Source: Trichoplax adhaerens (lineage: Eukaryota; Animalia; Placozoa). Taken from it: a stretch of 64,000 nt of DNA. A model generated the notes under the pieces. It saw only the letters and a program-made list of their open reading frames with translations. It ran no database searches and had not been told where the DNA came from. Below are positions 56,454-60,339 of this stretch, piece by piece (the stretch's first letter is position 1; each line of letters starts with the position of its first letter). The stretch is from positions 310,001 to 374,000 of the forward strand of contig NW_002060961.1 of NCBI RefSeq assembly GCF_000150275.1. Reading direction: 5' to 3'. The position numbers and the translations under genes are program-made.

Positions 56454-59400
56454 TTATGGAGTATTTGCAGGAACATTAGTTGAAGATGTAGTAACAGTCT
56501 TTTTTTCACGCATAGCAGTTAAATGGTAGCCAAACGGCCACAATGCAATTCTCCCTAATTTGAAATTCTGAATTCCAAATGGGATGCATATTAGAGTTAT
56601 AAACTGAACTAAACCTAGGAGGAAGTGCTCGATCGCGAATAAAATTCCAAAAGGTAACCAGAGTACGTTGCCACAGCATGTTATACAACTCTAGACAGAT
56701 AGCCAGAGAGAAGTTTTACGATTGCGAATCATATTAATAATCAATTTACGTAATATTTAAATATTAAATTGATAAAATAAGTGGATTTTGTACGGCTTGC
56801 TATCAATTTAAATATAGGATATCCCTTGATCCGTTTATTTTATACATTTGAAGTTAATGCAATTATTATTATAATAAGCGAGACATATTTGCTCTATCTT
56901 TAAAATAAATGATAGGATTCTTTATCTATTGATGATAACTGTAGCTTTTTATTTCTGTACCACTCATGTTAAAGCTGCGATCCAAAATTTTATAATAAGT
57001 ATACCAATACGAGCATACTGGATATAACTTTAGTAATGCTAACCTTTTCGTCTTCCCGAGATACCGGATTTATGCCACTGACATCTTTGCCGAATGGTAA
57101 TAATGTTAACATAGCCATCTAAAAAATGAAAGAAAATTAAATGTTAACCTATTCGCCTTGTTGAAAAGTAGTAGTAAAAGACTTCTAGAGTAACAGTAAT
57201 TTTATTTCTATCATGATAAAATGTATGGACGACGGTATGATATTGTGATAGTGCCTTTAAAAAAACACTCCAGTAAGAACTTCTATTTGTTGATAATTTC
57301 AATTCATTTCATAAATTGTTTATCCTACCGTAAGTATGTATTTGCATAATTTAACCTACAAGTAAAGCTTATTTTGAGATCACACACTAATTACATAAAA
57401 GCATTCTAATACTACAGAAAGAGACTTGTGCAATCGAACAATCTCATCACAGACCTGATCTATTTTGGGACTGTTTGTGTGAACTAACTTTCGAATTACG
57501 GTAGACATTGACATAATCCTTAATCTTACCCACTACTGTACGGTATCATGATCTATTTTTGAAATTGTAATTATTTTATAACTAGCTTTCGAATACGATA
57601 TAGACACGCTTTTCAATCTAATTCAATATTTGTACACACTGTAGTCTAACCTACAAACATCAGCTATTTTGAGAATGTGCTTATTAACTGTAAATAAACT
57701 AGCTTTCGAATTAGAGTTTTATGCAATCTGTAATTTAACCTACAAACATCAGCTATTTTGGGGGATCTGCTTATTAAGTGTAAATAAACTGGCTTTCGAA
57801 TTAGAGGTTTATGCAATCTGTAGTCTAAGTTTAAACATTATCTATTTAGGGTAGCACTTATACCGTGAAGTAACTTTGAAATTAGATATTTGCAAACTTT
57901 ATAACCTGCAAATATGGTTTATTTTAGGGCTGCGCTTATGTGATGAGCTAGCTTACTGTTACTAATTAATGGAGATATCTTGGAATGATATCTTATAAAG
58001 TCGAAATATATCGATATATATCAGTCTACCTTAAAGCAGACAAGGCCGCATGGAATACCAATAATCGTGACTGAAAATGCAACGCCCAAAAGAGCCCATT
58101 GAAGTGCCAAGATGAAGCCACCACAAATTAACCAAAAGACGTTGCCAACCCACTAATAACAAAGTGAAAGTATTTAATAAATATTCATTAGTATAGTATC
58201 ATTAGAAGACTAGAATCATATTATCTTCTTGTAGTCCATTGGTAATGACGATGGATAGATAGAAATTAGTAAAAATTCTCGAAAATTTGTCAGCCTGAAA
58301 TCGTATCTACACGTACTTTCGTCTTATAGAGGGTAGAAAAGTGAATCAAGAATGACATTAATTCTACAACTGTAGAGAGAATATCCAATTCTATGAGCTA
58401 CATAGTACAGTATAGCTTTAAAGGAAATCAAATATTTAAGATGTAAATGATATGAATATCTAGATGATGTTTACGTGTTCAAGATTTGAGAAAGGAGAGA
58501 TGAGGAATGGTAAAGATGATCCATCCTCTAGCTCTCGAATGGATAAGAATGATTTTACGTATAAGGAATGGATGAACAGACTAAATAGGGTATAGAATCA
58601 GCATTACATGAACATGATGTATCTTTTAGCGCTGGAATAGACAAAAATGACTTCATAAGGACTACAGTAGGATATGCAGGTAGTTTGACGATTGGGATCA
58701 TTATTGCATGGACATAGCGTGTCTTCTAGCCCTGAAATGATCAAGATCGATTTTATAGGGAATAGATATACTGCTAGCATAGGAGTAGAATCGCTATTGC
58801 ATGGAAACATATAATGTATCTTCTAGCCTTAACATAAACAACAACGACTTGGATAAGGATTGATGTGCGGTTAGTATCAGGAGTAACATCGGCATCGAAA
58901 GGGAAATAAGAGATCTTGTAGTCCTGGAATGGACAACAAGGACTTTCATCGAGAATAAAATGCAGGTAGTACGAAGAATGAAATCATCATGGAATGGAAA
59001 TGTCTTATCCTCTTTCACTGAAATCACTCATTGGAGCCACTATTGCTTTACAGTTATTGCTGAAGAGCAGTGGATCATAGATCGAATTCAAGACTATTGA
59101 ATAAATTAATAATTATTGTAAGCTTACATGGCAAGCATTGCGAGAATCATACGTCTCGGTGACTTCAGTTTGGGTAACGACAGGATTTTGTTGGCCTTGA
59201 TCGATTTTTAGGTTGATTTGCGTTTGATTCATGTTGAGGATTTGTTGGCCTTGATTTATTGCAGCAACATTGGAATCTGGATAGAGCGCAGGATTTGCTT
59301 GGCCTTGTTGTACGGCAGGAATTGCTTGACCTGGATACATGACAGGATTTACTTGGCCTAGTTGTACTGCAGGATTGGCTTGGCCTTGTTGCATAGCAGG

Positions 59401-59634
59401 AACTGCTTGACCTGGATACATGGCAGGATTTGCTTGGCCTGGATACATGGCAGGATTTGCTTGGCCTGGATACGTAGCAGGATTTGACTGCCCTTGATTT
59501 ACTGGGAAATTCTGTTGATTTCCATACGCAGGAGGATTTTCTTGAAATCGATGCTGGGGATTTTGCTGGCCTTGAGGCGCTGAAGGATTGCCTTGGCCTA
59601 GATTGATTGCCCCAATATTTTTCTCTTGACTCAT
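56454..59634 (-). CDS. Stand-alone double YccF-domain membrane protein with a P/Q/G-rich N-terminal tail, 4 exons, ~313 aa
   Basis: Exons 59634-59128, 58152-58030, 57118-57044, 56690-56454; all introns are phase 0 and GT-AG. Repeat 1 GNVFWLICGGFILALQWALLGVAFSVTIIGIPCGLVCFKMAMLTLLPFG and repeat 2 GNVLWLPFGILFAIEHFLLGLVQFITLICIPFGIQNFKLGRIALWPFG match the YccF pattern GNxxW...TIIGIPFG..FK....LWPFG. Confidence 0.9.
57340..57960. repeat. Degenerate ~80-95 bp tandem repeat in intron 2 of the YccF gene
   Basis: Recurring taacctacaaacatcagctattttg and aactagctttcgaatta. Confidence 0.75.
59255..59500 (-). repeat. 27-nt coding repeat encoding 9-aa units (PAMYPGQAN-like) x~8
   Basis: PATYPGQAN PAMYPGQAN PAMYPGQAV PAMQQGQAN PAVQLGQVN PVMYPGQAI PAVQQGQAN PALYPDSNV. 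Confidence 0.93.
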
Positions 59635-60339
59635 GATGTTGAAGATGGTAAAGACAGCTTCTTCCAATTTAACAACTCTTTGCGCTTAAGTCTAGAAAAT
59701 ACAACATTTCAATCAAAACCACCCAATAAGTTGGAATCCATCATGTTATAGCTGTTGTTACGCTTTGAGGATAAGATAGTCAAGATAGAGAAGTATTAGC
59801 TTATTATTACTCGTATTATTTTTATCCTTAAAGCCGATATTTTTGAGTCTAGAGTTTTAATCAAAACTACCCAATAAATTGAAATTCATCCTATTCTATC
59901 GAATTCAACGCAAAATGACTCTATCCATATTATAGCCAGGGGATAAGATTGATAGATAGGTTTTATGTTATTAATACTACTCGTATTCTATTTATCTTTT
60001 AATGCGATATTTTCGAATAGAGAGCTTTATTGTAAGATAGATAGGTTTTATTTAAAATCTTCTAGGATTCTATTTATCTTTTAAGGTGATATTTTAGAGT
60101 AGAGAGCTGATGATATAGCAAAGTTTAACAAGGCGTCGAAAAAATAGTTCTAAGCATTTCTTGACCTTTTATCGTCATGGAATTTGAATGCTAGATACAG
60201 AGAAAGGATAGAAATTGAAAGCAATAGCAACAACGAATGCTTGGCAAGAAGTGAAATGAATACTATTCTATCGATTGATCGATCAACCCCATTTCTTGTC
60301 CCTCTAGGCCATACTGTTAATCATCATCATCACACTGGC

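What the first reader, a model, noticed from the sequence alone, without database searches (positions are those of the whole stretch)
59128..59634. ESCRT/NEDD4 late-domain tail grafted onto the YccF protein: PSAP, PPxY and galectin-3-like YPGQA repeats
Seen: exon 1 encodes a disordered tail with PSAP (59586-59575), PPAY (59535-59524), about eight 9-aa PAMYPGQAN repeats and LYPD; a juxtamembrane Cys cluster (SCITCC) lies in exon 4. Known: P(S/T)AP binds the TSG101 UEV domain; PPxY binds NEDD4-family WW domains; the pair co-occurs in LITAF/SIMPLE, ARRDC1 and viral late domains; galectin-3 has YPGQAP 9-mer repeats that self-associate. Inference: a bacterial-type membrane module has been converted into an endolysosomal ESCRT/ubiquitin adaptor, possibly acting in MVB sorting, vesicle budding or symbiont-vacuole control. 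This could be an undescribed system.
Basis: partly seen in the sequence, partly recalled or inferred. Interest (0 to 1): 0.85.

Follow-up and report, generated by a model that had tools for sequence, protein, structure and literature searches.

The report
ESCRT/Nedd4 motif tail on eukaryotic YccF
A Trichoplax membrane protein with a YccF-type (best known from bacteria) four-helix core has a long floppy tail carrying the short PSAP and PPxY motifs that cells and viruses use to call in vesicle-budding machinery, and these motifs recur in its relatives in single-celled cousins of animals, so they are probably functional, though binding is untested.

Summary
On the minus strand, a four-exon gene encodes a 313-aa protein identical to Trichoplax adhaerens TRIADDRAFT_60970. 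It has a 169-aa Gln/Asn/Pro/Ala-rich tail followed by two YccF (PF03733) repeats.

It passes its own test of motif conservation:
- The closest non-placozoan relatives are eukaryotic: Ichthyosporea (Sphaeroforma, Amoebidium, Chromosphaera), Amoebozoa and others.
- Sphaeroforma, Amoebidium and an unnamed environmental sequence also carry P[ST]AP followed by PPxY, plus LYPx. Their tails are otherwise unalignable.
- Across 44 eukaryote-group tails, PPxY occurs 8 times against 3.6 expected. P[ST]AP occurs 6 times against 0.8. Both occur together 4 times against 0.22 (doublet-preserving shuffles).

The tail was therefore not grafted on in placozoans. It is an old eukaryotic feature, which Trichoplax lengthened with a 9-aa repeat.

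AlphaFold2 models residues 1-130 as disordered. Indirect evidence puts the N-terminus in the cytosol. The genome encodes UEV, WW-HECT and ALIX-type partners.

Caveats:
- Binding is untested; the co-fold gave no verdict.
- In Trichoplax the motifs lie in register with the repeat unit.
- The paralogue and most homologues lack the motifs.
- The "Galectin-3" name of the H2 orthologue is a low-complexity artefact.

No paper on eukaryotic YccF proteins was found.

The parts
59128..59634 (-). Exon 1: the start codon and the 169-aa N-terminal tail. Residues 1-130 are modelled as disordered. Residues 152-163 form a juxtamembrane beta-strand.
   Evidence: Open frame from ATG to a GT donor. 100% identical to P0267 residues 1-169. 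AF2 pLDDT is below 50 over most of residues 1-129.
59575..59586 (-). PSAP, residues 17-20: a P(S/T)AP-type motif and candidate TSG101-UEV ligand.
   Evidence: Read directly. P[ST]AP lies at residues 18-27 in P0008, P0030, P0031, P0026 and P0101. Enrichment is 6 observed against 0.55-0.81 expected.
59524..59535 (-). PPAY, residues 34-37: a PPxY-type motif and candidate ligand for Nedd4-family WW domains.
   Evidence: Read directly. PPxY occurs in 8 of 44 eukaryote-group tails against 1.9-3.6 expected.
59277..59486 (-). 27-bp (9-aa) tandem repeat array with unit about Y-P-G-Q-A-N-P-A-M. It is specific to this gene in this genome.
   Evidence: TRF gives 7.8 copies, 76% matches, and an 81-bp higher-order period. 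It is the only match in the genome. It is absent from homologues.
59275..59286 (-). LYPD, residues 117-120: an LYPx element at the end of the repeat array. It is a weak candidate for an ALIX-type motif.
   Evidence: Read directly. LYP occurs in 5 of 44 tails against 0.37-1.4 expected. In Trichoplax alone it is expected by chance (0.71), and no Leu follows it.
58030..58152 (-). Exon 2: the first YccF repeat, a helical hairpin.
   Evidence: Pfam PF03733, E 5.8e-12. AF2 helices 167-196 and 202-216.
57044..57118 (-). Exon 3: the end of repeat 1 and the charged loop between the repeats.
   Evidence: AG/GT boundaries. Matches P0267 residues 212-236. The loop 217-235 has 3 K/R and 4 D/E.
56454..56690 (-). 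Exon 4: the SCITCC cysteine cluster (56673-56690), the second YccF repeat, the Thr-rich C-terminal strand and the stop codon.
   Evidence: Pfam PF03733, E 1.3e-15. AG acceptor and TAA stop. AF2 helices 236-266 and 268-285 and strand 295-306. The Cys-rich loop is typical of the eukaryote group: 2.2 Cys against 0.7 in the others.

Best explanation
The gene (TRIADDRAFT_60970) belongs to a eukaryote-wide branch of the YccF/DUF307 family. These are small four-helix membrane proteins.

In this branch the termini carry disordered tails that are probably cytosolic. In the holozoan members the N tail has kept a set of short linear motifs: P(S/T)AP, then PPxY, usually with an LYPx element. The rest of the tail has diverged beyond recognition.

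Most likely mechanism (inferred):
1. The YccF core anchors the protein in an endosomal or plasma membrane.
2. PPAY recruits a Nedd4-family WW-HECT ubiquitin ligase.
3. PSAP recruits ESCRT-I through the TSG101 UEV domain.
4. The protein, together with any neighbouring cargo it presents to the ligase, is ubiquitinated and sorted into vesicles that bud away from the cytosol. These would be intralumenal vesicles of multivesicular bodies, or shed microvesicles.

This would make it work like LITAF/SIMPLE, Ndfip/Bsd2 or ARRDC1, but on a different membrane scaffold.

The 9-aa Tyr-Pro-Gly-Gln repeat is a Trichoplax-lineage expansion of the motif-bearing region. It probably acts as a spacer or a self-association segment.

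Shown here: the gene structure, the domains, the motifs, their recurrence and enrichment in relatives, the disorder of the tail, and the presence of partner genes.

Inferred: cytosolic orientation, binding, ubiquitination, and the sorting or budding outcome.
For: Gene and domains:
- Four exons with canonical splice sites, identical to two independent annotations.
- Two PF03733 repeats.

Relatives:
- The closest non-placozoan relatives are eukaryotic: Sphaeroforma, Amoebidium and Chromosphaera (Ichthyosporea), Vermistella, Petalomonas, Chromera, Triparma and Perkinsus.
- They neighbour the Trichoplax pair in both trees.
- They share eukaryote-specific features: cysteines before TM1 and TM3, a D-x-R element before TM1, and Thr-rich flanking strands.

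Motif map:
- Trichoplax: PSAP-17, PPAY-34, LYPD-117.
- Sphaeroforma: LYPE-21, PSAP-27, PPAY-43.
- Amoebidium: PTAP-18, PPPY-26, LYPQ-41.
- P0030: PSAP-27, LYPT-43, PPPY-59.

Enrichment over shuffles in 44 tails:
- Composition shuffles: PPxY 8 against 1.9, P[ST]AP 6 against 0.55, both together 4 against 0.10. Reversed motifs are little or not enriched (PA[ST]P 0 against 0.5; YxPP 5 against 1.9, P = 0.025).
- Doublet-preserving shuffles: 8 against 3.6 (P = 0.007), 6 against 0.8, and 4 against 0.22.
- The tails themselves are unalignable, z from -1.2 to 2.6. Retention of the motifs therefore points to selection.

Accessibility and orientation:
- AF2 models residues 1-130 as disordered. The N-juxtamembrane strand 152-163 and the C-terminal strand 295-306 flank a four-helix core.
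- K/R residues cluster in the inter-repeat loop and the C tail.
- Some homologues carry PPxY on the C tail instead (P0004, P0105, P0066).
- Some homologues start with MG plus a polybasic stretch.
- Some homologues have a signal peptide, an ectodomain and an extra TM before the core. All of these fit an N-in/C-in topology.

Partners are encoded in the genome:
- UEV.
- 19 WW matches, including a four-WW cluster followed by HECT exons at C1411:5476394-5479626, and two more WW-HECT loci.
- ALIX V-domain.

Functional precedent: the disordered N-terminal region of LITAF binds NEDD4 through PPSY and TSG101 through PSAP, and mutating the motifs changes its localisation (PMC5142333, PMC7865452).
Against: - No binding, localisation or expression data were obtained. 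The co-fold of a Trichoplax WW domain with the tail gave no verdict.
- In Trichoplax all three motifs sit in register with the degenerate 9-mer (PSAP and PPAY align with P-A-M-Y; LYPD aligns with M-Y-P-G). They could be drift variants of the repeat unit.
- LYPD is expected by chance in this tail (0.71) and has no Leu at +1 to +3. The strict YPx(1-3)L pattern is not enriched (1 against 1.0).
- More than 30 of the 44 eukaryote-group members lack the motifs. So does the Trichoplax paralogue 12 kb away.
- Three of the four double-motif sequences form one clade. Shuffles do not correct for relatedness.
- The eukaryote group rests on weakly supported nodes (support 39; 4 label changes).
- H1 against H2 is uninformative at 99% identity.
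- Topology is inferred, not measured.
Confidence: 0.6

Rival explanations
1. Regulated cargo rather than adaptor. The YccF core has its own, unknown membrane activity. The PPxY and PSAP motifs serve only as a built-in turnover signal, so that a Nedd4-family ligase and ESCRT remove the protein itself from the membrane, as with many PY-bearing channels and transporters.
For: The same motif evidence as the best explanation. The core is highly conserved from bacteria to eukaryotes, with nearly invariant N, W, G, P and K positions. This argues for an intrinsic activity. Lysines are present in the cytosolic loop and C tail. The motif-free paralogue would then be a constitutive version.
Against: Sequence alone cannot separate this from adaptor function. 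A PSAP that recruits ESCRT-I directly is more typical of adaptors and budding drivers (LITAF, HRS, ARRDC1) than of ordinary cargo (established knowledge; PMC7865452).
Confidence: 0.22
2. Chance motifs in a low-complexity tail. PSAP, PPAY and LYPD are accidental variants of a Pro/Ala/Tyr-containing 9-mer repeat. The tail is only a spacer or a self-associating low-complexity region, galectin-3-like in composition, with no link to ESCRT or Nedd4.
For: The motifs are in register with the repeat unit. LYPD is expected by chance. Most family members and the paralogue lack the motifs. There is no binding support. The H2 orthologue was auto-named 'Galectin-3' because of the repeats.
Against: The PPxY plus P[ST]AP pair occurs in only 0.02-0.2% of shuffles of this tail. 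The same ordered pair lies near the N-terminus of ichthyosporean homologues that lack the 9-mer repeat and have unalignable tails. Enrichment across the group holds, and one reversed control (PA[ST]P) is not enriched while the other (YxPP) is only weakly so. PSAP and PPAY lie outside the array that is detectable at DNA level.
Confidence: 0.13
3. The tail is read by other proline-recognition modules, such as ALG-2/PDCD6, SH3, EVH1 or non-Nedd4 WW proteins like YAP-type. It would then link the membrane protein to calcium signalling or the cytoskeleton rather than to ESCRT sorting.
For: The Tyr-Pro-rich repeats recall ALG-2 targets such as ALIX, PLSCR3 and CDIP1 (PMC7865452). The genome has many WW domains outside HECT ligases.
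Against: Neither ALG-2 motif type is present in the tail by direct reading: no PPYP...YP and no P-x-P-G-F/W. The repeat is Trichoplax-specific, whereas the conserved elements are exactly P[ST]AP and PPxY.
Confidence: 0.05

Closest known systems
LITAF/SIMPLE and CDIP1 (animal endosomal membrane proteins with a proline-rich N-terminus)
   Same: A disordered cytosolic N-terminal region carries PSAP and PPxY close together, upstream of a small membrane anchor flanked by cysteines. In LITAF these motifs bind TSG101 and NEDD4/ITCH and set its localisation (PMC5142333, PMC7865452).
   Different: The membrane part here is a two-repeat YccF four-helix domain (PF03733), not the zinc-binding monotopic LITAF domain. 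No LITAF domain was found by Pfam. Binding is untested.
Ndfip1/2 and yeast Bsd2 (Nedd4/Rsp5 adaptors)
   Same: Small polytopic membrane proteins whose cytosolic N-terminus presents PPxY motifs to WW-HECT ligases (established knowledge). Trichoplax encodes at least three WW-HECT loci.
   Different: Different membrane fold (three TM helices, unrelated family). Ndfip has no P(S/T)AP. Here there is a single PPxY plus PSAP.
ARRDC1 and viral late domains (Gag p6, VP40, arenavirus Z)
   Same: P(S/T)AP and PPxY (and YPxL types) co-occur within a short disordered stretch that recruits ESCRT for budding away from the cytosol (PMC6874086, PMC8402826).
   Different: Those proteins are peripheral or soluble, with arrestin or matrix folds. 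This one is an integral membrane protein of a family known mainly from bacteria. No budding activity has been shown.
Bacterial YccF (E. coli inner membrane protein, DUF307)
   Same: The same two-repeat PF03733 core, with the same nearly invariant positions.
   Different: Bacterial members are about 120-150 aa with no tails. The eukaryote group adds N or C tails, juxtamembrane cysteines and Thr-rich strands. The function of the bacterial protein is itself unknown, and no relevant paper was found.
Galectin-3 N-terminal domain
   Same: A nine-residue period with a Tyr-Pro-Gly core in a Pro/Gly/Gln/Ala-rich disordered region (own knowledge). The H2 orthologue is auto-annotated 'Galectin-3'.
   Different: No galectin carbohydrate-recognition domain and no PDB galectin match. 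The likeness is compositional, not homology.

Membership tests
YccF / DUF307 (Pfam PF03733) | Two tandem PF03733 repeats scoring above the gathering cut-off (27 bits) | tested here: met
   Exon 2 scores 46.5 bits and exon 4 scores 58.2 bits. The whole protein P0267 scores 108 bits over 2 stretches.
YccF / DUF307 (Pfam PF03733) | Helical-hairpin pair forming a four-helix membrane core | tested here: met
   AF2 gives helices 167-196, 202-216, 236-266 and 268-285 with pLDDT above 90. The only PDB fold matches are generic four-helix bundles, Z up to 6.6.
Late-domain / PY-motif membrane adaptors (functional class: LITAF, Ndfip, ARRDC1) | P(S/T)AP and/or PPxY in a disordered region | tested here: met
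   PSAP at residues 17-20 and PPAY at residues 34-37, in a region with pLDDT below 50.
Late-domain / PY-motif membrane adaptors (functional class: LITAF, Ndfip, ARRDC1) | Motifs conserved in orthologues beyond what composition predicts | tested here: met
   Recurrence in Ichthyosporea and other eukaryotes, with enrichment over two kinds of shuffle. Other placozoan lineages could not be reached.
Late-domain / PY-motif membrane adaptors (functional class: LITAF, Ndfip, ARRDC1) | Motif-bearing region faces the cytosol | tested here: inconclusive
   Only indirect evidence: no signal peptide, charge distribution, N and C strands modelled flanking the four-helix core, C-tail PPxY in homologues, MG plus polybasic N-termini, and signal peptide + ectodomain + extra TM variants.
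Late-domain / PY-motif membrane adaptors (functional class: LITAF, Ndfip, ARRDC1) | Physical binding to TSG101 UEV and Nedd4-family WW domains | not testable with these tools
   Partner genes exist. The single co-fold job returned no verdict. The UEV domain is split over exons, so it could not be submitted by reference.
LITAF domain family / Ndfip family / arrestin-domain family (homology) | Presence of the family's own domain | tested here: not met
   Pfam finds only PF03733 in P0267 at E<=1. The protein therefore works like these families at most; it is not a member.
Galectin-3 | Galectin carbohydrate-recognition domain | tested here: not met
   No galectin domain in any exon or in P0267. 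No PDB galectin at E<=1.
ALG-2 (PDCD6) targets | ABM-1 (PPYP..YP) or ABM-2 ([P/hydrophobic]-P-x-[P/hydrophobic]-G-[F/W]) motif | tested here: not met
   Direct reading of the tail against the motif definitions in PMC7865452: the Y-P-G is followed by Q, and there is no PPYP.
ALIX-binding late domain | YPx(1-3)L | tested here: not met
   The Trichoplax element is Y-P-D-S-N-V with no Leu. The strict pattern is not enriched in the family (1 against 1.0). The looser LYP element is enriched (5 against 0.37-1.4), but that test was post hoc.

The most novel reading that the evidence does not exclude
Eukaryotic YccF proteins with this tail are an ancient, pre-animal class of cellular budding drivers. 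They would be integral membrane proteins carrying all three late-domain types (P(S/T)AP, PPxY, LYPx) that nucleate ESCRT-dependent release of extracellular or intralumenal vesicles. They are retained in placozoans and, as far as these searches show, were not seen in other animals. In Trichoplax the Tyr-Pro-Gly 9-mer array would add galectin-3-like self-association that clusters the late domains, playing the part that Gag multimerisation plays for viruses.
Probability: 0.15. Interest if true: 0.8.

Novelty: new variant of a known kind. Interest (0 to 1): 0.58.

Why it matters
YccF/DUF307 is a widespread membrane protein family with no known function in any organism. No paper in the searched library deals with its eukaryotic members.

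P(S/T)AP and PPxY motifs persist on otherwise randomised tails, from ichthyosporeans to a placozoan. This gives the eukaryotic branch its first testable functional hypothesis: a link to Nedd4-family ubiquitination and ESCRT sorting.

It would add a fourth, unrelated membrane scaffold to the small set of cellular late-domain adaptors (LITAF, Ndfip/Bsd2, ARRDC). It would also date such adaptors to before the origin of animals.

There are two annotation corrections:
- The H2 orthologue is not a galectin.
- The gene's nearest sampled relatives are eukaryotic, which argues against a recent bacterial transfer into placozoans.

Tried and rejected
- **Co-fold of a Trichoplax Nedd4-type WW domain** (L009:1710-1886) with tail residues 1-60: score 0.04, no verdict. 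This is neither support nor evidence against.
- **RNA evidence:** No transcript evidence for the exon junctions was obtained here.
Neighbouring gene annotation and the contigs of the unnamed homologues could not be fetched.
- **UEV co-fold:** not attempted. The UEV domain is split over exons, and a joined model may not be submitted.
- **Fold search of the AF2 model** against 48,161 PDB representatives: only generic four-helix bundles (ferritin/Dps, Z up to 6.6). No functional lead.
- **PDB sequence search:** only a low-complexity match to the Spt5 repeats.
- **ESM Atlas:** only bacterial YccF clusters.
- **Repeat elsewhere in the genome:** none found.
- **Galectin-3 homology:** rejected, no CRD.
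- **ALG-2 motifs:** rejected, patterns absent.
- **Strict ALIX YPx(1-3)L:** not enriched.
- **Recent bacterial origin of the placozoan gene:** not favoured. The nearest neighbours are eukaryotic. Monophyly of the eukaryote group is not resolved with about 130 columns.
- **Other placozoan species:** none were present in the protein collections searched.
- **Spliced model:** it was searched exon by exon by reference. Full-length work used the database proteins P0001 and P0267 returned by the tools.
Full report
**1. What is in the sequence**

On the minus strand an open frame starts at the ATG at 59634 and runs to a GT donor after 59128. It encodes 169 residues rich in Gln, Asn, Pro, Ala and Gly.

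Three further exons have canonical AG/GT boundaries: 58152-58030, 57118-57044 and 56690-56454.

I searched the spliced model exon by exon, by reference, and never joined the exons for a search.
- Exons 2 and 4 each match Pfam YccF (PF03733), at E 5.8e-12 and 1.3e-15.
- Exons 1 and 3 match nothing.

Searching the exon-1 open frame returned one protein, P0001. It is 313 aa, from Trichoplax sp. H2 (RDD41833.1), 99% identical, and named 'Galectin-3'. Its 90% cluster also holds P0267, which is T. adhaerens TRIADDRAFT_60970 / XP_002116992.1 / B3S9N4. P0267 is 100% identical to exons 1 and 4 over their full length and matches exons 2 and 3 over their aligned parts.

Two independent annotations therefore give the model I derived. 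The genome (105.6 Mb in 1414 contigs) is that of T. adhaerens.

- PSAP at 59586-59575.
- PPAY at 59535-59524.
- LYPD at 59286-59275.
- SCITCC at 56690-56673.
- A 27-bp tandem array of 7.8 copies at 59277-59486.

**2. Anatomy of the protein**

AlphaFold2, run on a 129-sequence alignment, gives the following:
- Residues 1-130 have no structure, with pLDDT mostly below 50.
- There is a short strand at 134-139 and a confident strand at 152-163.
- Four helices follow: 167-196, 202-216, 236-266 and 268-285, with pLDDT above 90.
- A C-terminal strand lies at 295-306.

The PDB fold search returned only generic four-helix bundles (Z up to 6.6). The core has no solved relative.

The nine-residue period is not confined to the DNA-level array. 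In protein it runs from residue 10 to about 153, roughly 16 units with one single-residue shift.

PSAP and PPAY occupy the position of P-A-M-Y in the consensus unit. LYPD occupies the position of M-Y-P-G. This is an important caveat and I return to it below.

The repeat occurs nowhere else in the genome and in none of the homologues.

**3. Relatives**

An exhaustive HMMER search with exon 4 found 1234 proteins at E<=0.001. A profile search found more.

After the Trichoplax pair, the best hits that carry names are eukaryotic:
- Vermistella (Amoebozoa).
- Amoebidium, Chromosphaera and Sphaeroforma (Ichthyosporea, unicellular relatives of animals).
- Petalomonas, Chromera, Triparma and Perkinsus.

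Several come from transcriptomes, so they are expressed.

In a FastTree of 256 cores these fall into one 46-member group together with tail-bearing unnamed sequences. Support for that group is weak (39). In an IQ-TREE of 84 cores the nearest neighbours of the Trichoplax pair are again eukaryotic. The group label needs 4 changes against 28 for shuffled labels, so the group is clustered, but monophyly is not resolved.

The group shares features that the other sequences lack:

| Feature | Eukaryote group | Others |
|---|---|---|
| Cys in the inter-repeat loop (mean) | 2.2 | 0.7 |
| Cys just before helix 1 (mean) | 0.79 | 0.08 |
| D-x-R element before helix 1 | 47% | 2% |
| Thr-rich C-terminal strand | 44% | 3% |

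No other animal appeared in any search.

The gene's nearest sampled relatives are thus eukaryotic, which argues against a recent bacterial acquisition by placozoans, although monophyly of the eukaryote group is unresolved. The tail was not grafted on in placozoans.

A paralogue lies 12 kb away on the same strand. It has the same core exon structure and a 74-aa tail without any of the motifs.

**4. The decisive test: are the motifs conserved?**

Yes, in deep relatives:

| Sequence | Motifs (position of first residue) |
|---|---|
| Trichoplax | PSAP-17, PPAY-34, LYPD-117 |
| Sphaeroforma | LYPE-21, PSAP-27, PPAY-43 |
| Amoebidium | PTAP-18, PPPY-26, LYPQ-41, PSAP-73 |
| P0030 (unnamed, sister to these) | PSAP-27, LYPT-43, PPPY-59 |
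| Chromosphaera | PPPY-15 |
| P0160 | PPSY-6 |
| Petalomonas | PPRY |
| Chromera, P0004, P0066 | PPxY on the C tail |
| Vermistella | LYPEL-7 |
| P0026, P0101 | PTAP-21, PTAP-22 |
| Triparma-like sequences | ASAPP at residues 7-23 |

Counts over 44 non-redundant tails of the group, against two shuffle types:

| Motif | Observed | Composition shuffles | Doublet-preserving shuffles |
|---|---|---|---|
| PPxY | 8 | 1.9 | 3.6 (P = 0.007) |
| P[ST]AP | 6 | 0.55 | 0.81 |
| Both in one protein | 4 | 0.10 | 0.22 |

No composition shuffle in 3000 reached the observed values. For P[ST]AP and for the pair, no doublet-preserving shuffle in 1500 did either.

Reversed motifs serve as controls. PA[ST]P occurs 0 times against 0.5 expected. 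YxPP occurs 5 times against 1.9 (P = 0.025).

Two post hoc results:
- LYP occurs 5 times against 0.37-1.4 expected, while its five permutations give 0, 0, 0, 2 and 2.
- [AP][ST]AP occurs within the first 35 residues 9 times against 0.29 expected.

The strict ALIX pattern YPx(1-3)L is not enriched (1 against 1.0).

Outside the motifs the tails cannot be aligned: local alignment z-scores against shuffles range from -1.2 to 2.6. The motifs have therefore persisted while everything around them was randomised. That is the signature of functional short linear motifs.

For the Trichoplax tail alone, the PPxY plus P[ST]AP pair arises in 0.2% of composition shuffles and 0.02% of doublet-preserving shuffles. 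LYPD alone is expected by chance (0.71).

**5. Orientation**

This rests on inference only.
- There is no signal peptide, and 168 hydrophilic residues precede helix 1.
- K/R residues cluster in the inter-repeat loop (3) and after helix 4 (3+2). The intra-hairpin turns are uncharged.
- The N-juxtamembrane and C-terminal strands flank an even number (four) of helices in the model, which would put both termini on the same side.
- Homologues place PPxY on either terminus.
- One subgroup begins with MG plus a polybasic stretch.
- Another subgroup has a signal peptide, an ectodomain and an extra transmembrane helix ahead of the core.

All of this fits N-in/C-in. From memory, the C-terminus of E. coli YccF was mapped to the cytoplasm; I did not verify that here.

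**6. Partners**

The genome encodes:
- Two UEV loci.
- 19 WW matches.
- A four-WW cluster directly followed by HECT exons at C1411:5476394-5479626, plus WW-HECT loci on C1412 and C1413.
- ALIX V-domain exons.

A co-fold of one WW domain with tail residues 1-60 gave no verdict. It counts neither way.

**7. How it most likely works**

The core anchors the protein in a membrane, and the disordered tail reaches into the cytosol. PPAY recruits a Nedd4-family ligase and PSAP recruits ESCRT-I. The result is ubiquitin- and ESCRT-dependent sorting of the protein, and probably of the neighbours it presents, into vesicles that bud away from the cytosol.

The closest working analogue is LITAF/SIMPLE. Its flexible N-terminal region binds NEDD4 through PPSY and TSG101 through PSAP, and its localisation shifts when the motifs are mutated (PMC5142333, PMC7865452). 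Ndfip/Bsd2 and ARRDC1 are further analogues.

The protein is not a member of any of those families, because Pfam finds only YccF.

The juxtamembrane cysteines (SCITCC and the Cys before helix 1) are candidates for palmitoylation. This is inference.

The 9-mer array is a lineage-specific expansion. Because the unit resembles both PPAY and LYPx, it may have arisen by amplification of a motif-bearing segment. Its role as spacer or self-association segment is unknown.

**8. Rivals**

- The motifs may be a turnover signal for a protein that has its own membrane activity, making it cargo rather than adaptor. This cannot be separated in silico.
- The motifs may be chance variants of the repeat. The register observation, the motif-free paralogue and the many motif-free homologues favour this. 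The cross-species recurrence and the shuffle statistics weigh against it.
- Other proline readers such as ALG-2 may bind the tail. Both ALG-2 motif types are absent by direct reading, using the definitions in PMC7865452.

**9. Novelty and limits**

No paper in the library mentions the gene, the accessions, or eukaryotic YccF/DUF307 proteins.

I rate this a new variant of a known kind: a late-domain/PY adaptor architecture on a previously unlinked membrane scaffold, with pre-animal ancestry.

Limits:
- No binding, expression or localisation data were obtained.
- Other placozoan lineages could not be examined.
- The trees are weakly resolved.
- Relatedness inflates the significance of the shuffle tests.

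The first-stage note s1-801044 flags the same gene as an intron-containing animal YccF. I confirm the structure and add that its nearest relatives are eukaryotic.

Noticed in passing
G000:C1396:379280-380299 (about 12 kb upstream of the gene, 5-6 kb beyond the window's end; loci L002/L004): A second YccF gene lies on the same strand with the same core exon structure (it corresponds to P0002 in Trichoplax sp. H2, 214 aa). Its 74-aa N tail has no PSAP, PPxY or LYP. This is a nearby same-strand duplicate pair, one copy with the motif tail and one without.
   Followed up: partly
window 59128-59634 / P0001: The Trichoplax sp. H2 orthologue (RDD41833.1) is named 'Galectin-3' in NCBI. No galectin domain exists in it, so the name is a low-complexity artefact of the Tyr-Pro-Gly 9-mer repeats.
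   Followed up: yes
window 57639-57828 and 59951-60108: There are two non-coding tandem repeats. One is a 90-bp unit of 2.1 copies (89% matches) inside intron 2. The other is an 82-bp unit of 1.9 copies (85% matches) about 320-470 bp upstream of the start codon, in the presumed promoter region.
   Followed up: no
homologues P0031, P0028, P0007, P0058, P0074, P0087, P0101, P0161: Many eukaryotic YccF homologues end in -Y-V, -R-V or -V-V. This could be a C-terminal valine export signal or a PDZ-type signal. The Trichoplax proteins end differently (-N-T-P and -S-T-P).
   Followed up: no
homologues P0101, P0161, P0162, P0026, P0145, P0082: A stramenopile-like subgroup (it includes Triparma) begins with MG or MS followed by a polybasic stretch, which looks like a myristoylation signal. 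It carries [AP][ST]APP within the first 25 residues but no PPxY.
   Followed up: partly
homologues P0058, P0074, P0087, P0049: Unnamed environmental (JGI/IMG) sequences fuse a signal peptide, an ectodomain of about 180 aa rich in N-x-S/T, and one extra transmembrane helix to the N-terminus of the YccF core. This is a different elaboration of the same scaffold.
   Followed up: no
homologues P0005, P0006, P0088, P0117, P0144, P0165: Other long forms, one of them named as a Gemmataceae (bacterial) protein, carry Cys-x-x-Cys zinc-ribbon-like N-terminal extensions instead of proline-rich tails.
   Followed up: no
G000:C1411:5476394-5479626: A Nedd4-family ligase gene has four WW domains, each on its own exon, followed by HECT exons. 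In WW1 and WW2 the intron falls just before the first Trp of the domain.
   Followed up: partly
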